Shown: piece after piece, positions 630 to 57,658 of the stretch
Layout: each line of letters opens with the position of its first letter
Position numbering within the stretch: position 1 is the stretch's first letter
Source: Octopus sinensis
Taxonomy: Eukaryota
Direction of reading: 5' to 3'
Length of the DNA stretch: 64,000 nucleotides
NCBI RefSeq assembly: GCF_006345805.1
Contig: NC_043014.1
Coordinates: 30,132,001-30,196,000, forward strand
The notes under the pieces: generated by a model
The model's database searches: none
What the model saw: the letters and a program-made list of their open reading frames with translations, nothing else
What the model was told of the DNA's origin: nothing
Made by a program: the position numbers and the translations under genes

Positions 630-1790
630 CTACAATGCTAGAAATAAGAGCTAAAGAGGTCTGATGCTGCAGTCAACGCACATAACTTCTTCTTTTCCAC
701 TTCGCCTTTGGCTATGTATACCTGCCGCCCACCCTCCTTTTTGGCTACGTGGTACAGTTCCCTGCTACCCACACCCTTCCTGGCTTTCCAGGCCCATTTC
801 TTTGCTCTAATAGCTTTGTCTACCATACTATTCTACCACCACGTAACTCTAGGTCTAGAAGGGACTTTGCACCATCCACAGACTCGGTCTGTGGCACTCA
901 GCAAGCTGTCCCGTAGGAATTTCCAGCTATCTTCTATGTCCAATGTCTGTAGCTCCTCCTCCCGCTCATCAAATTTCTTGATGAGGATGTCCCTAAATCT
1001 CTGACCATGTGAAGGGTTCTTTAGCTTCCAAATCCTTCTTTTTTGGATTGATCTGCTTCTTGGTATCCTTCTGGCCTCGAGCCTAAAGTCACTAATGACT
1101 AGCCTATGCTGGGGGGTACATTCTTCACCCGGGAGGGTCTTTGTATTTAAGAGCAACCCTGCGTCCTGCTATCAGGTGAGGATGAAATCAATCTGGCTAG
1201 CAGAGTCCCCTGATTGATAGGTTAACAGGTGGCTGTCTGGCTTCCTGAAGTTAGTGTTGCAGATTAAAAGGTTACATGCATCACAGAACTCCAGTAGCCT
1301 AGTTCCCTCATTGCTTCAGGCGCCAATACCATGGCCACCATGTACCCCAGTGAAGATACCAGATTCCCGCCCAACATGCCCATTAAAATCTCCAGCCACT
1401 CGTCTTTGAGGTAGCCTGTAGAAGGGTATCATAAAAGTGGTCCTTCTGATCATTTGGTATCCCCACATGTGGGGCGTAGGTGGAGATAATTGTAGCTGTG
1501 CTGTATTGCAGGACTAGCCTGAACTTAAGCACTCTATCACATACCCTAACAACCTCTATGACTTTATCCACCCATTTCTCCACAAGGAGTATGCCTACAC
1601 CCCCTATGCCATCCATGTTACCTTGCCAGAAGACTTTATACCTATGGGCCTTGCCTGTGAGGACCCTAGCTGAAGCTCCTCTCCATCTTACCTCTTGTAT
1701 GCAGCAGACATCAACCCGTCTCCTTTCAAGCATCTCTATCACTGTCATTTAACATCTGTTTTCTATGCTGGTATAGGCTGGATGTTTCAA
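630..1790 (-). mobile_element. RTE-clade LINE fragment (APE endonuclease and linker), degraded
   Basis: VDVCCIQEVRWRG...GVGILL...IISTYAPHVG endonuclease motifs; KRRIWKLK and TWW motifs; frameshifts and stops. Confidence 0.88.
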
Positions 1791-10261: not shown

Positions 10262-10436
10262 AACCCCAAAAATAAGAAACAAGAATGGATCAGTAGTTTA
10301 GTACAATTGTTTCATACTATAAACATTTTATTAAAGCTGCAAAAATTACAGCAAATATAATGTCCAGTAATATAATGTATAGTATGAAACAATTGTACTA
10401 AACTACTGATCCATTCTTGTTGCTTATTTTTTGGTT
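10262..10436. repeat. Inverted repeat, 44 bp perfect core (10278-10321 / 10378-10421), 56-nt spacer
   Basis: Read directly; arms extend about 10 bp further with one mismatch. An unfolded sister copy starts at about 27105. Confidence 0.92.
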
Positions 10437-12531: not shown

Positions 12532-13913
<1,382 letters not shown>

Positions 13914-14064: not shown

Positions 14065-14847
14065 CATACATACACACATATATAGCATCATCATCATCAT
14101 CATCATCATCATCATTGTCATCATTTAACGTCCATCTTCCATGCATGCATGCATAGGATGGTTGACAGGAGCCAACCAAGTAGAAGATCTACCCAAGGTT
14201 ACTGTATACATTATATACATAAATATATGTGAAGGTGCATGACTTAGTGGTGAGGAGTGTTGCACTCACAATCTTAAGATCGTGGTTTCCATTCCTAGAC
14301 CAGTGGTGCACTGTGTTCATGAACAAACACTTCATTTCACATAGGTAACCTTGCAACAGACTACTATTCTGTTCAAAGGGTAATGTTGGCCTGCCCTCCT
14401 AGCCAGCAGCAGGGTGGTACCACTCAAAAGCTAAAACAATACAAAGTACATGGTAACCAGTAGTGTATAACAACTTACAACAATCTGGTTGATACCATGG
14501 TAAAAATATATATCATATAAATGTAAGTATATATATATATATATGTTAATACATATATATGCATGCATATATTATATATGTACTATGTTATTTTTTTGTC
14601 TGAAGAATTTCTAATAGGAAATTCCTTATATGTCTATCTAACATATAAAATTTTGTAATTCCTATTAGCAAATGAAACACATGTAATGGAGAATAAATAA
14701 TACCCAAAAATATTCAATTTCCTATTTTGTTATATTATATATGCATATATATATATACTACTAATATAGGATGAAGTTTTTTTCTCTACAGAAAAGAATT
14801 CCATCAAGAAATGTGGCAGCATATTAAAATACCTTTACGGTTAAAAT

Positions 14848-15290
14848 TATAAGCAACTTCTAAGTAAGGGCTAAAGAAAATTATTTCAAAGCCAATATGC
14901 TGATAAGAGACTATTAAATCGTCAATTTCCACATATAATCTACTCGCTACAGAAAAAATTGAACTGAAGTCGGACAAGCTGGCCGTTAGAATATTTAATA
15001 TTCGTTATCTCTATATTGAATCAATTTCGGAATTAATCTCATAAAAGATTTATTCATATTCTCTCGTAAGCTCTACTCAAGACAAATAAATCTTTTATGA
15101 GATTAATTCCGAAATTGATTCAATATAGAGATAACGAATTTTAAATATTCTACGGCCAGCTTGCCCAACTTCAGTTCAATTTTTTCTGTAGCGAGTAGAT
15201 TATATGTGGAAATTGACGATTTAATAGTCTCTTATCAGCATATTGGCTTTGAAATAATTATCTTTAGCCCTTACTTATAAGTTGTTTATA
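14848..15290. repeat. Long near-perfect inverted repeat (arms 14848-15054 and 15085-15290, 30-nt loop) in the putative AMPD 3'UTR
   Basis: Manual alignment of the arms shows about 6 substitutions and 1 single-base indel over 207 bp. Confidence 0.97.
15049..15054 (-). promoter_or_regulatory. Candidate poly(A) signal AATAAA for AMPD
   Basis: tttatt on the + strand. It is the first canonical hexamer I found downstream of the stop; a variant ATTAAA lies at 15225-15220. Use is not demonstrated. Confidence 0.35.
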
Positions 15291-15417
15291 TATATATATA
15301 TATATTTATATGCATATATATGTATATTTATATGAATATATAACATGCATACACTCACACAAAGACACTCATTGGCACAAGCATACATGCACAACACTAA
15401 AACGCACATTCACTCAC

Positions 15418-15450
<33 letters not shown>

Positions 15451-15490
15451 TACATAAACATTACATAATCTCTACTTAATACTGGATACG

Positions 15491-15730
15491 TTAATAGCAA
15501 GTGAAATCATTTGTATGGAAATGAGGAAGGGCTTGTTTATGTATTTTTCTAATGTCGCTTGTGTTGCTGTCTGGGCTACCAGCTTGCAGTCCACGGCAGA
15601 TATACTGCAACTCTTCCACCAGCGTCTCATAGCGGTACGCCACTCGAATGTCTGGAACATTGGTACGACTCACATCATTCCCTGGAACTCCTTCACGTGT
15701 GTAATTAGGGCCTAACCAATGCTGTTTGAC
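15491..15730 (-). CDS. AMPD2: AMP deaminase (AMPD2-like) probable terminal coding exon
   Basis: [79 protein letters not shown]-stop. Matches the conserved AMPD C-terminus (WLG.NY...G..GND...TNVP.IR..YRYETL..EL). Acceptor tttgatgcAG at 15732-15731, phase 0. The last ~30 aa are non-conserved. Confidence 0.92.
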
Positions 15731-18818: not shown

Positions 18819-18929
18819 CTCATGAGGGAATCCACTCTGTAGAACACTGTTGCGGGCAATCTCACACATATCACAAGTGCTTAACTTCCACACCTGGGTG
18901 GCAATACTGTACTCTTCCATCAGAGGTTC
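18819..18929 (-). CDS. AMPD2: AMP deaminase (AMPD2-like) penultimate exon
   Basis: 111 nt, 37 codons: [37 protein letters not shown]. Found by reading; not in the ORF track. Acceptor ttacttgcAG at 18931-18930, donor GTTTGT from 18818. Continues ...HFTK in frame as in known AMPD proteins. Confidence 0.96.
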
Positions 18930-20402: not shown

Positions 20403-20568
20403 TGGCATAGGAGTGGCTGTGTGGTAAGTAGCTTGCTTACGAACCATATGGTTCCGGGTTCAGTACCACTGTGTGGCACCTTGGGTAAGTGTCTTCTACT
20501 ATAGCCTCAGGCCGACCAAAGCCTTGTGAGTGGATTTGGTAGACGGAAACTGAAAGAAGCCTGTCGTA

Positions 20569-20637
<69 letters not shown>

Positions 20638-21525: not shown

Positions 21526-21566
<41 letters not shown>

Positions 21567-22989
21567 CATACATATATATATGCATGGTGGTATACTTTCA
21601 GCTTCTGTCTACCAAATCCATTCACAAAGCTTTGGTTAACCTAGGGCTATTGTAGAAGACACTTGTCCAAGATGCCAAACAGTGGGACTAAATTCAAAAC
21701 TATATCGTTGGGTAGCAAGCTTCTTATCACCCAGTCATGCCTGCAACTATGAAAAGAATATGTTATACACATACGTATTATGCATATATATATATACACA
21801 GGTAGCAACATGGTCTTCAGCTACCTTTAGTGACGTTTATTTTATTGTAAAAGACAGATATACAGAAAATTTATGTGACTGAAAATGAAAGTGGAGATTT
21901 ATGTGACTGGTGCCTCAGTTGTGTGGTGGGGTCTACCTGCAAAGTCATAATGCTCTTCTCCACCTCACCTTCACTAACAAAAAGACAGGTTCAAACATAA
22001 CAACCATTACTATATTGACAATGATGTAATCTCAAGGCAAAATATTGCCATATTTCCTCTGTGTGTCTCAGTAGCTGTGTTGATGTTGTTAAACCCTTGT
22101 TCAGCCTTGTGCAAGCAGACTTATGATCAAAGACATTACAGCTATGACCATCTTGCCTTTTCATAAACACACTGCACCTAAGGCCACATTATCTTAAAGT
22201 TTCTTTGCCTCAGACAGTAAAGTAGGGTTTCAGGAAAATTGGCTGCTATTTCTAGCTGGTTGAGTGACTGTGTAGAGGCTTCTTCATCAGCTTGACTACT
22301 TAACTACTTGGTTCTGTGATCAGCTGATCAATAGTTCAAACCTTGTATCTACACCGGCATTACAGTGAGGTCTCCAGACAAAATACAGCATTTTACTTAA
22401 ATACCTCAGTCTGCCTGGCTTACAAAAGGTTGGTTGCTGACTTTGCAGATTAGCAGAGGCATAGCTGAAGAAGCAATTGATCTAATTATATTCAAATAAC
22501 CATCTCACTTCTATGTTAAGTTGATAAAATGAATGTAAAACATTAGAAGGTGAATGAATAAATATATTCAAACTAGTTAACAGAAAAATAGATCAGCTTT
22601 TGTTGCTGATGAAGACAACCAACCAACCAACAAACAAGCAAGCCAGTCAGACAGTCAATGTACGAACTATATATATTATAAATATTCAAACAATCATCCG
22701 AATCTATCCAACTGACAGAAAAAGTATGGTATTGTTGTTATTTTGTCTGCAATAGCCAGATGTGTGTGCAGTAAGCTATGTGTGTGTATATGTGTGTAGC
22801 AATCCAGGTCTACATGCTGTAAGGTAAGTTACATGTATGTGAAAGTAAGCTAGGCATGTCTGTAGCAAGCCAGATATGTACATAAACAGGGTCATATGAA
22901 TATAGTAAGCTACACACATATGCATGCATGTATGTGTGTGGAGAGTAGGAGAAATGGGAGAAAGAGAGGAGAAAGGAGAGAGAGGGAGG

Positions 22990-27027: not shown

Positions 27028-27109
<82 letters not shown>

Positions 27110-27660
27110 CAAGAAAAAAGCAACAAGAATGGATCGGTAGATTAGTACAATTGTTTCATACTATAAACATTTTATTTCAAGCTGCAAATATTACAGCAAA
27201 TATAATGTCAAGTATTCATCAGCTAAATCACATATAGGTTTTCCAAGTTTCTTGTAGAGTGTAAATATCCTTATGAAGTTATAGGAGTGAGTTCCATGAA
27301 TCTGAAGTAAGATTCCAAGCATACTATATTTATAGTATATATATAAGAGAGGTATTGGTATCCAGAAAACCCAAGGTTGCAAGTAAGGTTATGTAAGTGC
27401 TATGGAATGACCATAGTTAAACTCTTGGTTCAATAATAATATGAGTGAGAAGCCTAATGCAGGTCTTGTATGAGCATGTGTATATATGTATATGTATGTA
27501 AAATTACAAATAAGGAAACAATTTTTAGTGGCTAATACCATAGCGGATCTATTTTTAGCGCTAGAGTCGACCATATAGTTGTCACTCTCTCTTATATTTA
27601 TATATGTATGTATGTATAAATGCATGCACATGCACACACACATATGTGTGCATAAGTATG

Positions 27661-28935: not shown

Positions 28936-29314
28936 TAAATTGCAACACTTAAATTGCAGGAACAGTCAACATATGGCTTCTAGTAAGCTATTTGAACAAT
29001 CCATGGTTTATATTTAAAAGCATTTTGAGAAGCCCATACATCTAAACCTCTGGTCATCCTCTCAGGCGGTGCAAAATTCCACTGCAACTTTTGTGCAACC
29101 ATTGCATAGCACAAGAACAGACACACATGAATATAGACCTTGTACTGGCTGCGCAGTAAGAAGCTTGCTTTGCAACTACATGATTTGGGGCTCAGTTCCA
29201 CAGCATTGCACCTTGGGCAAGTGTCTTCTGCTATAGCTTTAGGCCAACCAAAGCCTTATAATTGGATTTGGTAGATGGAAACTGAAAGAAGCCTGTCATG
29301 TTTTTTCTTTTCTT

Positions 29315-29558: not shown

Positions 29559-29725
29559 TACGACAGGCTTCTTTCAGTTTCCGTCTACCAAATCCACTCA
29601 CAAGGCATTGGTCGGCCCGGGACTATAGCAGAAGACACTTGTCCAAGGTGCCACGCAGTGGGACTGAACCCGGAACCATGTGGTTGGTTAGCAAGCTACT
29701 TACCACACAGCCACTCCTGCGCCTA
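29315..29725 (-). mobile_element. SINE family A, full length, low divergence
   Basis: Close to the other young copies. Confidence 0.88.
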
Positions 29726-29954
29726 TGTATATGTGATGTGTATATAAGTGCGTGTGATTGTGTGTGTGTGTGTGTGTGCGCACGTGTGTCCATGTCCTAC
29801 CCATCACTTGACAACTGGGGCTGGTGTGTTCCAATCCCTGTAACTTGACAGTTTGGCAAAAAGACACCGACAGAATAAGTATCAGGCTTAACAAAATCTA
29901 AGTACTGGAGTCAATTCATTTGAAAACACAAACATACTAACACACACACACATA

Positions 29955-32250: not shown

Positions 32251-33006
32251 ATAAAGAAATATGATCATAGAACAAACATCAAATTCGAGTCAATAACTTT
32301 ATAATTAAAACACCATGCCTCAAACAGTTAATCACACATAGATATTACCATGGTTCCTAAACATAAAAATATACATATATATAAAAATATAGAAGGTAAA
32401 AATATATATGCGAATAAAATACAAATATATAGAACAGCCTATCAAAAAAGTAAATATAAATTACTAAAAATTCATAAAAGTTCCAAAGTGTGTCATGCTA
32501 CCTCAAAACTGATAAACTAAGATAAATTATCATATCAAATGACTAAAATTATTTTTTTAAAGTTTTTTTTTACTCCCCTCACACAAAAGTATGTCCAAAA
32601 AGTTCAATACTTAAAACCATAGTAGGTTAAAGTCCATGAGCAAAAGGAGTTCCACAAGGTCAATTCAAACACAGGGGAGTAAAAAAAAACTTTTTAAAAA
32701 TATTTTTAGTCGTTTGATATGATAATTTATTTTATCTTAGTTTATCAGTTTTGTTGTAGCATAACACGCATAACACGCTTTAGAATTTTTATCAATTTTT
32801 AGTTGTTTATATTTACTTTTTTGATAGGCTGTTCTATATATTTGTATTTTATTCACATACCTTCTGTGTTTTTATATATATGTATATTTTTATATGTTTA
32901 GGAACCATGGCAATATTTATATGTGATTAAATGTTTGAGGTATGGTGTTATATATAAAGTCGTTGACTCGAAAATGATGTTTGTTCTATGATCAATGTTT
33001 CTTTAT
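32251..33006. repeat. Long inverted repeat (arms 32251-32579 and 32673-33006, 93-nt spacer), probable inverted Penelope pLTR
   Basis: Arms align end to end with scattered mismatches, roughly 85% by eye; abuts the PLE ORF. Confidence 0.9.
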
Positions 33007-33109: not shown

Positions 33110-34210
33110 ATATGTGTGGGTGGGGTGTATATTAACTGACACCCAAATAGAAATTCTAAGTAAGGGACTGAAGTTTACACCCACACCACAAAGACCAAAC
33201 TTCCTTGAACTGAAAAATGACATTGCAGAATTCTGCCGAAAACTCTGGCTGGCTGAACACTCCACCAACAACTCTAATGATGAGGACGAGTCACCAGCCA
33301 GCAACAAAAGCAACTTTTACCCAAATAAAGGGTTAAATAAAGCACTAGACACCTACTGTGAATACATTATGAACTTCCCCTTTTCAAAAATTGAACATAG
33401 AAATACTAAATCAAAGTTTACAAAGCATGAATGGAAGAACCTACAGGACTTACAATAAGATACAGATGCAACTATCAAAGAAGTAAATAAAGGGAGCATT
33501 GTCATTATCATGGACACAAATTACTATAAAGACCTAGCACTCACAATGCTAGAGGACAACAACTACAAAGAATAAAAAATAATGGAAAACCTCACAACTC
33601 TTTTAAAGAAGTATAACAAAGGCTTAACCAGCAAAGAAATTGACTACGTAGGCTATTTCAAATGCAAAACAAGCAACTTTTATGGTTTACCAATATCTAA
33701 AATTGAGATCAACCATAGCAGGCTTGGTATGTGAAACACACAGACTCAACAACTTCTTGGACATCTTCCTAAAACCCTCCCTAAAACATATACAGAGCTA
33801 CGTACAAGATGACCTAGACATGCTAAATCATCTGCCAAAAACGGTAAGTAGACATACAATTTTTACTTCATTCGATGTTGTCAACCTATACACTAACATT
33901 CTCAATGATTATAGAATAACTACAATACAATACTGGTTAGACACTCACCAATCTGAACTTCCAGCATGCATAGAAAAGGAACTTATCATTGATGGGCTCA
34001 GATTTATACTTGAAAACAACTTTTTTACTTTCAATGGTTCAGATTACTGCTAAACACATCAGGAACAGCAATGGGTATGAAAGTATCCTCTACAAACACC
34101 AACTTAGTCATGGGATTTCATGAACAAAAAATTTACAACTAATCTTTTCTAATATTTGGTCACACATTCCATACACAACTCAGAAACAGTTAGTAAAAAT
34201 ACCTGGATGA
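33110..34210 (+). mobile_element. Penelope-like element RT pseudogene
   Basis: LSKGLKFTPTP, degraded ADKG..IVIMD, SFDVVNLYTNI, GTAMG and a DD motif at about 34205; stops and frameshifts. Confidence 0.85.
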
Positions 34211-47639: not shown

Positions 47640-47960
47640 ACATAGCGCAGTAGTGGTGAGATGTGACAGCAAAGAAAAGCATACATTCACTCTCTGCATG
47701 CAATTAGACTCGGAAAGTTCGTGAGGAACCCATTGACCCAATTTGCTGACTTTTCCGATAGCACACAGGTCTCAATGAATGGTTGACTGACCAAATCCAA
47801 GCTTCTCTGCTAGTTCCTCAACAGTTACGATGAGATTTTGTTCCACCAGGGTTTTCAGGATGTCCTTGTCGAGTTCTACAGATCTTTCAGGATGAGGCTC
47901 GTCTTCTAGGCTGTAGTTTATGGCTCGGGATTTCTGGAACCACCATTGACACTGCCTTAC
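47640..47960 (-). mobile_element. Mariner N-terminal fragment
   Basis: SLEDEPHPERSVELD.D.LK.LVEQN...TVEELAEKLGFGQSTIH HTH region. Confidence 0.75.
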
Positions 47961-48320
47961 ACTTACTGTCCAATCCCCATATACTGCATTAATATTTCTT
48001 GTACTTTGCACACATTTATATTCTGTTATTCTTTTATATGTTTCAGCCTTGAGGTTGTGGCCATGCTGGATCATGTGTGTGTGTGTGTGTGTGTCTATCT
48101 GTCTGTCTGTCTGTATGTATATATGTATATGTATGTGTGTGAACAATAATATTTTCAACAGATGTGTTGCAAATGTATCTGATTGTTCTCAAGCTTCAAT
48201 ACTGTGTGTGTGTGTATGTGTGTGTGTATGTATGTATGTATATGTATGTATGTATGTATATGTATGTATGTATGTATGTGTGTATGTATGTATGTGTGTG
48301 TGTGTGTATGTGTGTGTGTA

Positions 48321-49595: not shown

Positions 49596-49996
49596 AGGTG
49601 TAGGAGTGGCTGTTTGGTAAGTAGCTTGCTAACCAACCAATGGTTCCGGGTTCAGTCCCACTGCGTGGCATCTTGGGCAAGTGTCTTCTACTATAGCCCT
49701 GGGCCGACCAATGCCTTGTGAGTGGATTTGGTAGACGGAAACTGAAAGAAGCCTGTCGTATATATGTATATATATATGTGTGTGTGTGTGTATTTGTGTG
49801 TCTGTGTTTGTCCCCCTAGCATTGCTTGACAACCGATGCTGGTGTGTTTACGTCCCTGTCACTTAGCGGTTCGGCAAAAGAGACTGATAGAATAAGTACT
49901 GGGCTTACAAAGAATAAGTCTCGGGGTTGATTTGCTCGACTAAAGACGGTGCTCCAGCATGGCCGCAGTCAAATGACTGAAACAAGTAAAAGAGTA
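49596..49996 (+). mobile_element. SINE family A, young
   Basis: Full head, centre and tail. Confidence 0.9.
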
Positions 49997-50495: not shown

Positions 50496-50905
50496 TACTC
50501 TTTTACTCTTTTACTTGTTTCAGTCATTTGACTGCAGCCATGCTGGAGCACCGCTTTTAGTCGAGCAACTCGACCCCGGGACTTATTCTTTGTAAGCCCA
50601 GTACTTTTTCTATCGTTCTCTTTTGCCGAACCGCTAAGTGACGGGGATGTAAACACACCAGCATCGGTTGTCAAGCAATGCTAGGGGGACAAACACAGAC
50701 AGACAAACACACACACACATACATATATATATATACATATATACGATGGGCTTCTTTCAGTTTCTGTCTACCAAATCCACTCACAAGGCTTTGGTCTGCC
50801 CGAGGCTATAGTAGAAGACACTTGCCCAAGGTGCCACGCAGTGGGACTGAACCCGGAATTATGTGGCTGGTAAGCAAGCTACTTACCACACAGCCACTCC
50901 TGCGC
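50496..50905 (-). mobile_element. SINE family A, young; inverted partner of 49596-49996
   Basis: Full head, centre and tail in opposite orientation. Confidence 0.9.
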
Positions 50906-53052
50906 TGTATGAGTGTTTACATATTTTGTTTTTTTATATATTTATCCATGAAGTAGTCAAGTTGAAAAGGTGGCCAGCTATGGCTGACTACTGATGGAAG
51001 AGAAGTTTGGAGTAGATAATTATTTCATCACACACACACACACACACGCATGTGCATGTGAACAAACACAAACGTACATACCACCAGGCTCACTTCTGCA
51101 TTAAAATATGAAGTTTTGTGAGAACAAACCCTACCATCACCAATCCAGTCAACTTTGTAATTTGTGCTATAACATTGGATGTAAAAGGTCAATGTTAACT
51201 TAATGCCAACATTTCAAACAAATTAATACTAAGGTTAAAGTTGAAAGTTTATATATATATATATAAAACCAGTTATGTTGAGTGCATGCGTAACAAAAAC
51301 AATAAGAAACAAGGTTATTGTGAAGAGAGGTGCATCTTGACGGCACTGCTTCGTTAAAGAATTTTGGTTTTGAAAGTCATCTATTGTTATTGCCCTGATT
51401 GAACAAACCTAGAACAGGAGCATTCATGACCATACCTATTTCTTTATTACCCACAAGGGACTAAACACAGAGGGGACAAACAAGGACAGACATAGGTATC
51501 AAGTCGATTACATCGACCCTAGTGTGTAACTGGTACTTAATTTATCGACCCCGAAAGGATGAAAGGCAAAGTCGACCTCAGCGGAATTTGAACTCACAAC
51601 GTAACGCAGACGAAATACCGCTAAGCATTTCGCCCGGCGTGCTAACGTTTCTGCCAGCTCGCCGCCTTTCATGACCATACCATTTTTGTTTCCAGCAGCG
51701 GTAGTGAACCTTGGATTACATTATGCAATGTGTCATTTTTGAAAGAGGTAGGGTGCTGTTTGATTGTGACTTGCTTATTATTTCTAGCATGTTGAGCAAC
51801 CCTACATGACATATGTAGAGGTTTCCTGTTATTAGGGTTTATGTATGTAGAGGCACATGGCTTAGTTGTTAGGGTGTTGGACTCATGATTGTAAGATTGT
51901 GGTTTTGATTCCTGGCTGGGAGATGTGTTGTTGCTCCAGTCCACTCAGCTGACAAAAATGAGTAATCCTGCAACGGATTATCATCCTATCCAGGGGGACT
52001 ATATATACCACAAAATCCAGGAAACCAGTGCTATGAATCTATATGACTCGAGAAGGAGTCATTTATACTTTATTTTTTAAGGTTTATGTATGTTACAAGT
52101 CAATAAGGGATCCTCTACATGGTCATTTGACTTGCCAGGAAGAGCAGCCAATTTTTCCACAACCCACACCTTACTATTTTTAAAGAAAGTGTAGGACACA
52201 AGACAAGGTGGTCATAACTGGAATGCTTTTGATCACAGATCTACTCAGTCATAACTGATGTTGTGGTATTTTAGGTGTGAAATCTGAATTAATCTGCAGA
52301 TTCTAATAATAAACCTGCTCAAGGACTGAGATAATTATTACATTCACAAGCAATTGGTGTTGTGTCGCCCTTTTGTTACTGATAAAGCACAAACGTGTAT
52401 ACACACATATACATACCTACATACACACACACACACACACAAACATACACACACTCATAAGTGATCACACACACACACACACACACATACACTCTTCCAC
52501 ATGCACATACATATACACACATATATAGACACATTCATAAACATATACATACATATACATGCACACGCATACACATTCGAATTAGCACTTTTGTATAAGT
52601 AGCGGACTATAATACAGTAATTTCCCTTTGTATAACGGTCTTTTTTCATAGCGTTTTTCAGCTGGCCAGATAACCGAAGAGATGGTGTTGTGGATTTCCA
52701 CCTCGGCATCCGAAACTTGGCTACCGAATAATTGTCACATATTATTTTACAGATAAATTTCCTCTATTTACATAATATTGAGGTCTCTTTCTTTCTTTTA
52801 TCTTACTAAGAAGTTATGTATCCCAATAATGTAAGGAGTAGCTTCACTAGCAAGGGGTTCCCGATGGTAGTCTAAGACAGCATGTTATAAATGTTACCCT
52901 CATTGTAAATGTAAGTAAAAATAGGGAGTTTTATAGAAAATGAAAGTATTGATGTCACCATGAAACAATGTGGTGGTTATAGAGTGGGGAGGCAGCTAAC
53001 AAGTAGGGTTATCCAAATAAACTTTATGATTCATATGTTTAATAAACATATA

Positions 53053-54948
53053 CCGTAAATTCCGGACTACAGAGCGCACCTGATTAAAAGCCGCATGCTC
53101 TACTTTTAGAAAGAAAATCAATTTTGTCCTTGTACAGGCCGCACCGGATTTTAAGCTGCAGGTGTCCAACGTTGTAATATGAGATATTTACACAGAAAGA
53201 TATTACACGTGAGGACTTTTTGACTTTTAATTTAGTCTGTATGATATCATAAACAAACACATTTTGCAAATGCTTTTTTTCAAACAGTGCCTGCTACCTT
53301 TAAATATATGTATGTATCAGTAACACACAAATTACGTTGCTTATGCTTTTTTACTGAACAGTACACGAACGACATTCCTCCTAACGACATTCCTCCTATA
53401 TATATACACACACTGCAGCTTACCAGGTCAAAAGTTATTGATCGCCTTCTTCATCTTCTTCCTGCACACTGAAACCATCGAAGTCCTCTTCTTCAGTGTC
53501 CGAATTGAACAAACTCAGGATCTCGTCACTCACTTCATTGTCGCTCTCACTTGAGCACACCCAGTACTCTTCATCATGCAGCAGTCCAGCTTTTCAAAAC
53601 CCGTTGGTGATGATGGATGTTTTGACACGGCTCCATGCATTTAGTTGAGTGAAAGATGCTCTTCGCATGCAGCCTGTTTTGGTGAAGGATTTCTCGCTGC
53701 TCGTCATCCAATCCTCCCACTCACGGCGCAGTGCCACTTTAAATGCCCGGTTCACGCTGATCTCCAGTGGCTGCAAATACTTAGTGGTGCCACCAGGAAT
53801 TACAGCTGGAATTGAGTTTGTACTCTTGGTGGCAGCTTTCACTGAATCTGTTATATGGGCCCTCATGCTGTCCATAAAGAGCAATGCTTTTTTTGTGTGA
53901 AAAAATCCCCCAGGTCATTTGGCATAGCACTCTCTGAGCCAATCCTTCATTAGGCTCTCCATCATCCAACCTTTCTTATTGACTTTCACCACAATTTCTT
54001 TTGGGAATTTTTCCTTTGGCATTGTCAGCTGCTTAAAAATCACCATCGCTGGAAGCTTTAGTCTGGATGCTGTGCACCCCAGAACACAGGTAAAATGCAT
54101 TCTCTCATGGCCACTTGTTTTCAGTGTGATGGATGAGTCACCTTTTTTATTAACAGTCCAAGTGAGTGGCAGGTCAAACGTCAAAGGTACTTCATCCATA
54201 TTTATGATATTTTCTGGCCCGATGGAATCCTTTGCTATCTTTGTTTGAGTGAATGTGCGAAAGTTAACAAGTTTTTCCTCATAGTCGGGAGGGAGCTGCT
54301 GACACAAAGTCATGCATGCCCTGACGGACAGGCCTCTTCTCATAAATCTAAAACACCATGATGGCCCACATCCAAAATCTTCGATTTTCATTTCAGTGAC
54401 GATTGTTTTAGCCTTCAGTCTGATCTGCACAGTGGAAATACTGCAGTTTCTTGCTCTCCATATGTTAACCCAGTCTTCAAGAAAGTTTTCAAGTTTGAGC
54501 CATCTGCTATAGTTACCTCTGAAAGCTTTCGTTGTTTTTTTGCACTGACTCAGTTCTTCCTGCTGGCATCTCCACTGTCTCACCCTCGATTCATTTATGC
54601 CAAGTTTACGTGCAGCAACTCGATTTCCTTCTTCAACCGCCAGATTGACCGGCTTCAACTTAAAAGCTGCATCATATGCTTTTCTTCAAGTGTTTTCCAT
54701 GTTAACGAGGGTGAATACAAATGACAGCTTTACAATACCGGTAATCGATTTGTGAAAGTGCTCTTGATTTATCGCACAATTTCATTGGACCTCTGTGACC
54801 TACTCATCAATTTGATTGGTCTACTGTTGTGAGGCAAAACGTTTTTTGCGGCATGACAAAATAAAACATGCATTAGCCGCACCATAGTATCAGCTACAAT
54901 GTTCAAAGTGTGGGAAAAAAGTAGCGGCTTATAGCCCAAAATTTACGG
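53053..54948 (-). mobile_element. Full-length pogo-superfamily (Passer/POGK-like) DNA transposon, inactivated
   Basis: TA TSD at 53051-53052 and 54949-54950; TIR begins CCGTAAATT at both ends. Transposase starts at ATG 54700 (MENT*RKAYDAAFKLK...GNRVAARKLGINES, Brinker-type HTH) and includes a CENP-B-like HTH, NMDE, MDS and QPLE; in-frame stops at codon 5 and at 53915-53917. Confidence 0.93.
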
Positions 54949-56144
54949 TATTTTGTCTGGCTGTGAACAAGCAGCTGAAAGCCTTGTGATTTAATGACAG
55001 AAACCATCTTCATAAGGAGATCGAGCATATTTATAAAGCATATGGATATGGTTCTATATATTCTGCATTAAATCAAGAAATGCTGATGAGTGAAAATTTT
55101 GTAAATAATAATTGGTGTGGGTCTGATTCCCATTTTTTTATGTTGAGGGCTTATGTGCCCCAATATTGGACTATTTTCTATAGCCAATACACGATGAACA
55201 CTTACAAGTTCTGTCACCACTGTAAGAGACAAATATACAGCAACACTAGGAACTTTCTAGGAGGTATATAACTTCTACTATCATTGGTTAGCTTTCACCT
55301 TTCTATGTTAGCATGGGTCAGATGGAATCCATTGGGGCACACTTTGCAGCCAGATATCCTTCCAGTTGCCAACTTTCACTGGTTTCCAGTAAAAAATAAT
55401 ATTTCTCCATGACCAGACACATATTTCACAGAACATTGGAAACAAAGAACACCACTTGTCTGACGGTATGCTTCTTTACAACTACTGAGTTGGGGACTAT
55501 TGAAGCAAGCTTGCTTCAATACTCCTCACACTACCATGAAACTACTTACTTTCTCCCTCCACTACTGCTTACCTTCCTCTTCACCCATTCTACCTTTAAA
55601 TTTCCTTGCATTATGATTTGAAATGCTAGATTTTTATCTCTCCACTCTGAAAACAGAACCAGATCTATCCAATATTTATGAGCTTCCGTTACTGGTTGCA
55701 TATTTTTGTGAACTACATCTGCCAACATTATGAAGTAAATCTGAGTCCCCAGAAACAGCAGTTGGACCTGTAACACCAGACCTTCTCCCCTTTAATTTTT
55801 CTGTGTCTTTGTACTCTGTGTAAGTTTGCTCTGTTAAATAGCTATCTATATAATTATACATGAATATTAATTGTCTGAAATTTTTCAGTCTTTGCTTTCT
55901 CTCTATTTACATGTATACATAAATGTATATTTTATATATCTAACCCAAACAATCTTATTTCTTTATTTTCATCATTATCTCCATATCTGCTTACCTGGAT
56001 TCCTCTTATAGCCACTCTTTACTCCAGAGCTTTGGTCCTTTGTAATAATTTTGGAATATAGGTTCAAATCATTTGAGCGCTACAAAGTGTTTCCTATATT
56101 GAGGATTTTTGGATCACATCTTTTGACTATATATATATATATAT

Positions 56145-57283: not shown

Positions 57284-57658
<375 letters not shown>

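What the first reader, a model, noticed from the sequence alone, without database searches (positions are those of the whole stretch)
14848..15290. ~207-bp near-perfect hairpin in the putative AMPD 3'UTR: candidate ADAR/Dicer substrate
Seen: two arms (207 and 206 bp) with about 6 substitutions and 1 indel, a 30-nt loop, starting 200 nt after the AMPD stop. The arm sequence is not simple repeat and I found no other copy in the window. Known: duplexes this long are efficient ADAR substrates and can feed Dicer, and coleoid cephalopods have very high A-to-I editing. Inference: if included in the mRNA, this is a single-locus regulatory duplex (hyper-editing, nuclear retention, Staufen binding or hp-siRNA) on a purine-metabolism gene. 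The high arm identity implies recent origin, arm homogenisation or selection.
Basis: partly seen in the sequence, partly recalled or inferred. Interest (0 to 1): 0.75.

Follow-up and report, generated by a model that had tools for sequence, protein, structure and literature searches.

The report
Young palindromic insert behind octopus AMPD gene
A real, nearly perfect 443-bp DNA palindrome lies just behind an AMP deaminase gene of the common octopus, but it looks like one of many young, neutrally decaying foldback or transposon-type inserts in this genome, not a special regulatory device.

Summary
The arms are 14848-15054 and 15085-15290, with 6 substitutions and 1 indel, a 30-nt loop, and a start 200 nt after the stop codon of the minus-strand AMP deaminase gene. 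As RNA it folds at -339 kcal/mol (z = -41).

The gene is Octopus vulgaris "AMP deaminase 2-like".

The arm sequence has no other copy in the window, and none in the 102-kb orthologous locus of O. bimaculoides. An assembly gap there prevents a clean empty-site call.

Arm divergence (JC 0.030) is about 0.3 of the local neutral divergence between the two species. This puts the origin at roughly 4-10 My ago. An older palindrome in the same gene decays neutrally with no arm homogenisation, so high identity here means youth, not selection.

Tight whole-element palindromes occur about once per 20-25 kb in both loci.

The ends are TA-flanked, at the edge of a (TA)n tract, in a locus full of TA-targeting transposon remnants. 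The best reading is a MITE or foldback-like insertion. Genome-wide copy number could not be tested.

The only canonical poly(A) hexamers within 2.9 kb of the stop lie inside the element, so inclusion of both arms in mature mRNA is uncertain.

ADAR editing is plausible if the region is transcribed, but that is an already known kind of event. Interest is low to moderate.

The parts
14848..15054 (.). Left arm, 207 nt. This is the gene-distal arm and is transcribed second in the AMPD sense.
   Evidence: alignment; fold.
15055..15084 (.). Unique 30-nt loop or spacer (CATATTCTCTCGTAAGCTCTACTCAAGACA).
15085..15290 (.). Right arm, 206 nt. This is the gene-proximal arm and is transcribed first in the AMPD sense.
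   Evidence: alignment; fold.
14848..14849 (.). TA dinucleotide at the left end. It may be one copy of a TA target-site duplication. TA is palindromic, so it reads as part of the inverted repeat.
   Evidence: Inference only.
15289..15290 (.). TA dinucleotide at the right end, a possible second copy of the TA duplication. It runs directly into the (TA)n tract 15289-15306.
   Evidence: Inference only.
15049..15054 (-). AATAAA on the gene strand, 437 nt after the stop. These are the first six bases of the distal arm, immediately 3' of the loop. It is the only AATAAA within 5.1 kb downstream of the stop.
15220..15225 (-). ATTAAA on the gene strand inside the proximal arm, 266 nt after the stop. 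A second ATTAAA lies at 14994-14999 (+492).
15491..15730 (-). Last coding exon of AMP deaminase 2-like, with the stop codon at 15493-15491. Upstream exons in the window are 18819-18929 and 57485-57658.
   Evidence: Pfam AMP_deaminase 1.2e-16; splice sites read; 100% identity to the O. vulgaris CAI9737662.1 C-terminus.
15418..15490 (-). First 73 nt after the stop. They are 97% conserved with O. bimaculoides, as conserved as the coding sequence, and are followed by a (CA)n microsatellite.

Best explanation
The feature is a genuine, evolutionarily young palindromic insertion, specific to the O. vulgaris lineage. Its age is roughly 4-10 My. It lies 200-642 nt downstream of the stop codon of the O. 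vulgaris AMP deaminase 2-like gene.

It is most likely a non-autonomous DNA transposon of the MITE or foldback type. It is 443 bp long, has no coding capacity, and its two arms make up almost the whole element. It went into a TA site at the edge of a (TA)n tract, and it has been decaying neutrally since.

Any transcript that runs through both arms would fold into a duplex of about 207 bp with only a few mismatches and two G-U pairs. Such a duplex would be a good promiscuous ADAR substrate. That is an incidental consequence shared with very many such palindromes in octopus genes, not a selected device.

The element also carries the only canonical poly(A) hexamers in the first 2.9 kb after the stop. 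It may therefore act mainly as, or compete with, a cleavage/polyadenylation site, in which case many mRNAs would lack the second arm.

Shown: the structure, its position, its absence from the assembled O. bimaculoides orthologue, the neutral-looking arm divergence, and the abundance of similar palindromes.

Inferred: transposon origin, the TA duplication, and any RNA-level consequence.
For: - Structure and significance.
- No coding potential: the only arm ORF (57 aa) has no Pfam hit and no relative among 5.8 billion protein clusters.
- Ends: they read TA|TAAGCAACTT...AAGTTGTTTA|TA and abut a (TA)n tract.
- Candidate transposase sources: the window holds at least three remnants of TA-targeting transposases, namely Tc1-like DDE_3 at 12958-13724, pogo/Tc5 DDE_1 at 53597-54685 and mariner HTH_48 at 47775-48188. 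In O. vulgaris, Tc1-Mariner is the TIR group with the most recently active families and insertions, and structure-based MITE calls exist (PMC13282606).
- Foreign origin of the arm: it matches nothing else in the window or in 102 kb of the O. bimaculoides orthologous locus. Flanking homology is clear on both sides: 17858-15418 at 87% and 14287-13262 at 85%. This points to sequence brought in from elsewhere.
- Age: arm JC distance 0.030 against 0.089 (intron) and 0.112 (3' flank) between the species. With a split of 34 My (PMC10700109) or 13-33 My (PMC13282606), this gives about 4-10 My.
- Local control: the 756-bp palindrome at 32251-33006 is orthologous in both species, and its four arms differ by 8.5-10.7% in every pairing. 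This means neutral decay with no concerted evolution.
- Abundance of the class: three tight whole-element palindromes in 64 kb here and four or five in 102 kb of O. bimaculoides. At least two of them belong to multi-copy families.
- Poly(A) hexamers.
Against: - No second copy of the arm was seen anywhere, so the defining multi-copy property of a transposon family is unproven. About 166 kb searched out of a genome of roughly 2.8 Gb excludes only a very abundant family.
- The TA 'duplication' is ambiguous, because TA is self-complementary and the right flank is (TA)n.
- The termini do not resemble classical Tc1/mariner ends (no CAGT-type start). They also do not match any transposase-bearing remnant in the window.
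- No IR/DR or tandem sub-repeats occur in the arms.
- The O. bimaculoides assembly has a 259-N gap (L008 96042-96300) exactly where the empty site should be, and a different repeat follows it. Presence or absence is therefore not cleanly resolved.
Confidence: 0.55

Rival explanations
1. Local inverted duplication that is not a transposon. A double-strand break or stalled fork near the (TA)n tract was repaired by fold-back priming or template switching. This copied about 207 bp of unique local sequence in reverse next to itself and left a 30-nt spacer. It is neutral and single-copy.
For: No other copy of the arm in 166 kb. The structure directly abuts a cruciform-prone (TA)n tract. The 756-bp palindrome at 32251-33006 is likewise single-copy in both loci, so single-locus palindromes do arise here. 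In the O. vulgaris repeat annotation, the recently active 'MITE' class comprises 65 families with 65 insertions, about one each. This suggests many structure-called MITEs are unique palindromes (PMC13282606).
Against: Neither arm has any counterpart in the O. bimaculoides orthologous region, though the gap weakens this point. TA at both ends and a locus rich in TA-targeting transposons fit transposition equally well or better. Other palindromes here do belong to repeat families.
Confidence: 0.27
2. Both arms are part of the mature AMPD2-like 3'UTR, and the duplex is a selected, single-locus regulatory element. It would act through ADAR hyper-editing with nuclear retention, Staufen binding, or Dicer processing into hairpin siRNAs, and so control a purine-metabolism gene.
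For: The duplex is long and nearly perfect. Two of the three transition differences give G-U pairs rather than mismatches in the sense RNA. No canonical poly(A) hexamer exists between the stop and the hairpin. Octopus 3'UTRs are long, and their hairpins are edited (PMC9699675).
Against: There is no sign of constraint. The arm differences look neutral and include a CpG decay. The structure is young and absent from the assembled O. bimaculoides orthologue. The surrounding 3' flank evolves at or above the intron rate (10.4% against 8.4%), and only the first 73 nt after the stop are conserved. A sister palindrome in the same gene decays neutrally. Canonical poly(A) signals inside the proximal arm and at the loop could end transcripts before the duplex is complete. 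More distant cephalopods use a signal at about +120-130. Two of three G-U pairs is what chance gives.
Confidence: 0.08
3. Assembly artefact: a fold-back chimera from nanopore reads carried into the consensus.
For: The assembly was built from ONT R9.4.1 1D ligation reads with NextDenovo (PMC10700109). That read type is known, from general knowledge, to produce template-complement chimeras.
Against: The arms differ at 7 positions, which Illumina/ONT polishing with Hypo would not invent. There is a unique 30-nt spacer. The arms are only 207 bp and lie inside a chromosome-scale contig, whereas read chimeras give kilobase palindromes without spacers at read ends. Similar palindromes occur in the independently made Illumina-based O. 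bimaculoides assembly, and one is orthologous between the two assemblies.
Confidence: 0.03

Closest known systems
Miniature inverted-repeat transposable elements of the TA-targeting Tc1/mariner/pogo superfamily (Stowaway-like MITEs; hairpin-forming animal MITEs such as zebrafish Angel, recalled from general knowledge)
   Same: Small size (443 bp), non-coding, AT-rich, inverted repeats, TA at both ends, insertion next to a gene in a TA-rich site, and the ability to fold into a long hairpin when transcribed.
   Different: No second copy was found, so family status is unproven. The inverted repeats cover 93% of the element rather than 10-40 bp. The termini do not resemble known Tc1/mariner ends or any transposase-bearing remnant in the window.
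Inverted-repeat Alu pairs and other long hairpins in 3'UTRs edited by ADARs (mammalian IRAlus; C. elegans 3'UTR hairpins; octopus intron and 3'UTR hairpins described in PMC9699675)
   Same: An intramolecular duplex of more than 200 bp downstream of a stop codon, in an animal with very active ADARs.
   Different: This is one compact palindrome rather than two dispersed repeat copies. Inclusion in the mature mRNA and editing were not shown. The poly(A) hexamers sit inside the structure.
Hairpin RNA (hpRNA) loci that give endogenous siRNAs (Drosophila, mouse oocytes; general knowledge)
   Same: A long, nearly perfect inverted repeat with a short loop.
   Different: No small-RNA evidence, and no known trans target, since the arm matches nothing else available here. 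Endogenous hairpin siRNAs have not been established in cephalopods as far as I know.
Foldback (FB) transposons
   Same: Very long terminal inverted repeats with a short middle part.
   Different: FB arms are built of tandem sub-repeats. None are present here.

Membership tests
MITE (TA-targeting, Tc1/mariner-type) | Terminal inverted repeats | tested here: met
   Arms of 207 and 206 nt, 96.6% identical, reaching both ends of the element.
MITE (TA-targeting, Tc1/mariner-type) | Small (under about 800 bp) and without coding capacity | tested here: met
   443 bp. The longest ORF is 57 aa, with no Pfam hit and no relative in the protein collection.
MITE (TA-targeting, Tc1/mariner-type) | TA target-site duplication flanking the element | tested here: inconclusive
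   TA is present at 14848-14849 and 15289-15290. However, TA is self-complementary and the right flank is (TA)n. No 3-, 4-, 8- or 9-bp direct duplication is visible.
MITE (TA-targeting, Tc1/mariner-type) | Many dispersed copies in the genome | not testable with these tools
   No copy in the 64-kb window or in the 102-kb O. bimaculoides locus.
MITE (TA-targeting, Tc1/mariner-type) | Empty orthologous site in a related genome | tested here: inconclusive
   The arm is absent from the O. bimaculoides locus, but a 259-N gap and a different repeat occupy the place.
MITE (TA-targeting, Tc1/mariner-type) | Termini shared with an autonomous element | tested here: not met
   No similarity to the Tc1-like, pogo-like or mariner-like remnants in the window. 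Only these few elements could be compared.
Foldback elements / IR-DR Tc1-like elements | Sub-repeats (tandem units or outer and inner direct repeats) inside each arm | tested here: not met
   The best internal direct-repeat score is 21, against 22.6 +/- 3.9 for shuffles. Only one shared 8-mer was found.
ADAR-edited 3'UTR inverted repeat | Long intramolecular duplex in the sense transcript | tested here: met
   Continuous stem, -338.7 kcal/mol, z = -41.
ADAR-edited 3'UTR inverted repeat | Both arms lie within the mature 3'UTR | not testable with these tools
   No transcript data could be reached. The hexamer scan places the canonical signals inside the hairpin. Exact-ORF look-ups found no independent contigs.
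ADAR-edited 3'UTR inverted repeat | Clustered A-to-G mismatches between RNA and DNA | not testable with these tools
   Needs RNA-seq mapping.
hpRNA / endo-siRNA locus | 21-22-nt small RNAs phased along the arms | not testable with these tools
   Needs small-RNA libraries.
Known RNA families (Rfam 15), including microRNA precursors | Score at or above the family's gathering threshold | tested here: not met
   The best hits are plant MIR families at 54-61 bits against thresholds of 90-140, and they score equally on both strands. This reflects generic perfect-hairpin scoring.

The most novel reading that the evidence does not exclude
The palindrome is truly single-copy, is included in a long 3'UTR isoform of AMPD2-like, and works as a structure-gated switch. 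When the stem forms it hides its own AAUAAA and ATTAAA signals, which forces read-through. The resulting 207-bp duplex is hyper-edited or diced into endogenous siRNAs. This would be a first single-locus hairpin-RNA locus in a cephalopod, coupling alternative polyadenylation of a purine-metabolism gene to ADAR or Dicer activity.
Probability: 0.04. Interest if true: 0.7.

Novelty: new member of a known kind. Interest (0 to 1): 0.25.

Why it matters
If the element is transcribed, it is a clean, dated example of how a young palindromic insert creates a strong ADAR substrate and new poly(A) signals just behind a conserved metabolic gene. It is about 4-10 My old and is predicted to be present in O. 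sinensis and absent from O. bimaculoides.

That makes it useful as a test case, but it adds nothing new as a principle. Hairpins in octopus introns and 3'UTRs are already known to carry most A-to-I editing. The present evidence points to neutral decay rather than function.

The practical value of this check is to keep the finding from being over-read as a dedicated regulatory duplex.

Tried and rejected
1. Copy number through proteins. The 57-aa pseudo-ORF of the arm was searched against 5.8 billion protein clusters in the hope that Logan contigs of octopus runs carry called ORFs from other copies. There were no hits. This is uninformative, because the window's own ORFs are not in the collection either.

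2. Orthologous loci.
   - The last-exon ORF search reached only a more distant cephalopod (L001-L007), whose 3' flank is not alignable.
   - An X-padded C-terminal query identified the gene and the species.
One isoform was not on record.
   - Only O. bimaculoides (L008) could be fetched, and it has a gap at the critical place.

3. k-mer scans of the metagenome, prokaryotic-genome and viral collections gave nothing. The one exception was a 23-nt chance match in a bacterial-looking contig, with no extension.

4. Rfam gave only sub-threshold generic hairpin matches on both strands.

5. IR/DR or foldback sub-structure in the arms: none.

6. Supplements of PMC9699675 were searched for AMP deaminase, hairpin and inverted repeat, with nothing found. 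The supplement of PMC13282606 holds no repeat library.

7. Rejected: a microRNA precursor (far too long and perfect, and below every threshold); a coding feature; similarity to the neighbouring Tc1-like remnant, which is old and shared with O. bimaculoides.

Full report
OBSERVATION

The sequence at 14848-15290 is a near-perfect palindrome. The left half, aligned to the reverse complement of the right half, gives arms of 207 nt (14848-15054) and 206 nt (15085-15290). There are six substitutions and one single-base indel (96.6% identity), and the spacer is 30 nt long (15055-15084).

The six differences are three transitions and three transversions. One transition is a CpG-to-TpG change (AGTCGG against AGTTGG).

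The sense (minus-strand) RNA of 14800-15340 folds into one uninterrupted stem at -338.7 kcal/mol. Dinucleotide shuffles give -98 +/- 5.9, so z = -41. The arms are not simple sequence, and a blastn with 7-nt words finds no other copy in the window.

GENE CONTEXT AND ORGANISM

The minus-strand ORF 15491-15745 matches the C-terminal end of Pfam AMP_deaminase (1.2e-16). The last three coding exons in the window are 57485-57658, 18819-18929 and 15491-15730, with good splice sites. The stop codon is 15493-15491, which leaves exactly 200 nt before the hairpin.

A search with the spliced C-terminus gave 100% identity to "AMP deaminase 2-like [Octopus vulgaris]" (CAI9737662.1; GCA_951406725.2). It gave 98% to the O. 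bimaculoides orthologue. A second AMPD2 paralogue lies on the same chromosome.

The gene spans about 122 kb. Its introns and 3' flank are full of repeats:
- a high-copy SINE-like family;
- LINE endonuclease remnants;
- a Tc1-like DDE_3 remnant (12958-13724);
- a pogo/Tc5 remnant (53597-54685);
- a mariner HTH remnant (47775-48188).

No neighbouring gene is visible in the 15 kb downstream.

COMPARISON WITH O. BIMACULOIDES

The only orthologous DNA that could be fetched was the 102-kb O. bimaculoides locus L008.

- Homology runs from the last intron through the stop to the (CA)n microsatellite (window 17858-15418, 87%).
- It resumes at window 14287-13262 (85%).
- In between, O. bimaculoides has a 259-N assembly gap, a (TA)n tract and 350 bp of a different repeat.
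- The arm has no match anywhere in L008.

The palindrome is therefore not seen in O. bimaculoides, but the gap prevents a clean empty-site statement.

DNA for O. sinensis, for O. vulgaris outside the window, for the paralogue and for Argonauta could not be obtained, because each gene exceeds 100 kb.

AGE AND SELECTION

Local divergence between the two species, by substitution fraction and JC distance, is as follows:

| Region | Substitutions | JC distance |
|---|---|---|
| Last intron | 8.4% | 0.089 |
| 3' flank | 10.4% | 0.112 |
| First 73 nt after the stop | 2.7% | 0.028 |
| Last coding exon | 2.8% | 0.029 |
| The two arms of the hairpin | 2.9% | 0.030 |

The arm distance is about 0.3 of the neutral species distance. 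With a split of 34 My (PMC10700109) or 13-33 My (PMC13282606), the arms were identical roughly 4-10 My ago. This is after the split from O. bimaculoides and before the 2.5-My split from O. sinensis.

A local control is available. The 756-bp palindrome at 32251-33006 in the large intron is present at the orthologous place in O. bimaculoides. All six pairwise distances among its four arms are 8.5-10.7%. That star-like pattern means such arms are neither homogenised nor conserved here.

High arm identity in the target therefore means youth, not selection or gene conversion.

HOW COMMON SUCH STRUCTURES ARE

With loops under 150 nt, non-simple whole-element palindromes occur at the following places:

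| Locus | Coordinates | Size | Arm identity |
|---|---|---|---|
| Window | 10265-10434 | 170 bp | 93% |
| Window | 14848-15290 (the target) | 443 bp | 96.6% |
| Window | 32251-33006 | 756 bp | 84% |
| L008 | 33468-33570 | 103 bp | 94% |
| L008 | 52832-53148 | 317 bp | 98.5% |
| L008 | 55114-55373 | 260 bp | 73% |
| L008 | 77963-78233 | 271 bp | 88% |
| L008 | 83459-84224 (orthologue of 32251-33006) | about 770 bp | 89% (substitutions only) |

This is about one per 20-25 kb.

Two of them belong to repeat families. The 10265 element has copies at window 27109-27212 and at L008 96301-96505. The L008 52832 element is an inverted pair of the SINE-like family.

Longer-range inverted repeat pairs are also frequent in the intron. 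The target is the longest and cleanest of the set but is not different in kind.

WHAT IT MOST LIKELY IS

The element is short and non-coding. It is built almost wholly of two inverted arms. It ends in TA on both sides (TA|TAAGCAACTT...AAGTTGTTTA|TA) and sits at the edge of a (TA)n tract.

TA-targeting transposons are abundant in this locus. They are also the TIR group with the most recently active families and insertions in O. vulgaris (PMC13282606). The arm sequence has no source in the surrounding 166 kb.

I therefore read it as a MITE or foldback-like non-autonomous DNA transposon insertion (confidence 0.55).

The main rival is a local inverted duplication by fold-back repair next to the cruciform-prone (TA)n (0.27). 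I cannot exclude it for three reasons:
- no second copy was found;
- the TA duplication is ambiguous;
- the termini match no known or local autonomous element.

An assembly artefact is unlikely (0.03). The arms differ at seven positions, there is a unique spacer, and comparable palindromes occur in an independent assembly, one of them orthologous.

RNA-LEVEL CONSEQUENCES (INFERRED)

On the gene strand, the only canonical poly(A) hexamers within 2.9 kb of the stop lie inside the element:
- ATTAAA at +266, in the proximal arm;
- AATAAA at +437, the first six bases of the distal arm, right after the loop;
- ATTAAA at +492.

Variant TATAAA hexamers lie at +159 and +181 in the TA-rich stretch before the hairpin, and a third at +201 forms the first bases of the proximal arm. 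One search lists these as 161, 183 and 203, because it counts from the last base of the stop codon (15493).

In O. bimaculoides the first canonical hexamers (+458, +634) also lie in its own lineage-specific repeat. In more distant cephalopods the orthologous gene has a canonical signal at about +118 to +128, and a transcript contig ends at +135. Only the first 73 nt of the 3' flank are conserved.

Together this suggests an ancestrally short 3'UTR. Many O. vulgaris transcripts may end before or inside the palindrome. Only read-through transcripts, or the nascent RNA, would form the full duplex.

If the duplex forms, promiscuous ADAR editing is the expected outcome. In O. vulgaris most A-to-I editing is already reported to sit in intron and 3'UTR hairpins (PMC9699675). 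Nuclear retention, Staufen binding or dicing are possible but have no support here.

COMPARISON WITH KNOWN SYSTEMS AND NOVELTY

Structurally it behaves like a hairpin-forming MITE. At the RNA level it would behave like an inverted-repeat 3'UTR duplex of the IRAlu type.

- Membership in a MITE family fails on the untested copy-number criterion and on the ambiguous duplication.
- Foldback and IR/DR architectures were tested and not met.
- No Rfam family reaches threshold.

It is at most a new member of a known kind. Interest is low to moderate (0.25).

The most novel reading that remains possible is a single-copy, structure-gated polyadenylation or hairpin-RNA switch. I rate its probability at about 0.04.

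Noticed in passing
window 32251-33006; L008 83459-84224: A second, larger whole-element palindrome in the AMPD2-like intron: 756 bp, arms of about 330 nt, 93-nt loop. It is orthologous in O. bimaculoides. Its four arms are equidistant (8.5-10.7%), which indicates neutral, non-concerted decay. It is single-copy within the 166 kb available.
   Followed up: yes
window 10265-10434 (also 27109-27212; L008 96301-96505): A 170-bp palindrome next to a (TA)n tract that belongs to a multi-copy family. In O. bimaculoides a copy of the family sits in the AMPD2-like 3' flank, right after the assembly gap.
   Followed up: partly
window 49644-49996 / 50504-50858, 20409-20600 / 21551-21742, 29124-29297 / 29562-29735: Inverted pairs of a high-copy SINE-like family (more than 15 copies in the window) inside the 38-kb intron. 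These would also form long duplexes in the pre-mRNA.
   Followed up: partly
window 12958-13724 (+), 53597-54685 (-), 47775-48188 (-), 1383-1748 (-): Transposon remnants: Tc1-like DDE_3 and HTH, pogo/Tc5 DDE_1 and HTH_Tnp_Tc5, mariner HTH_48, and a LINE-type endonuclease fragment that scores below the Pfam threshold. The Tc1-like remnant is shared with O. bimaculoides, so it is old.
   Followed up: partly
window 15418-15490: The first 73 nt after the stop codon are 97% identical to O. bimaculoides, as conserved as the coding exon. They contain no recognised poly(A) hexamer and are followed by a (CA)n microsatellite in both species.
   Followed up: partly
L008 96042-96300 and 99064-99306: Both O. 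bimaculoides assembly gaps in the 3' flank lie between a (CA)n tract and a (TA)n tract. These are the places where O. vulgaris carries palindromes, so such structures may be systematically missing from that short-read assembly.
   Followed up: no
proteins P0121/P0255 versus P0245/P0124: Octopus has two AMP deaminase 2 paralogues on the same chromosome, with different C-terminal tails. Each gene spans 120-220 kb.
   Followed up: no
P0122 (O. bimaculoides model), L008 6001-95945: The 777-aa gene model has an N-terminus with a faint reverse-transcriptase (RVT_1) hit. A retroelement fragment is probably fused into the annotation.
   Followed up: no
L012 1254-1276: A 23-nt exact match of the inner arm to a bacterial-looking metagenome contig (JABAOH010113751.1), with no extension. 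It is a chance match.
   Followed up: yes
window 14611-14670: A small inverted repeat (CTAATAGGAA.TTCC ... GGAATTCCTATTAG type, about 14-nt arms) in the unique stretch between the hairpin and the point where homology to O. bimaculoides resumes. It may be another tiny element.
   Followed up: no
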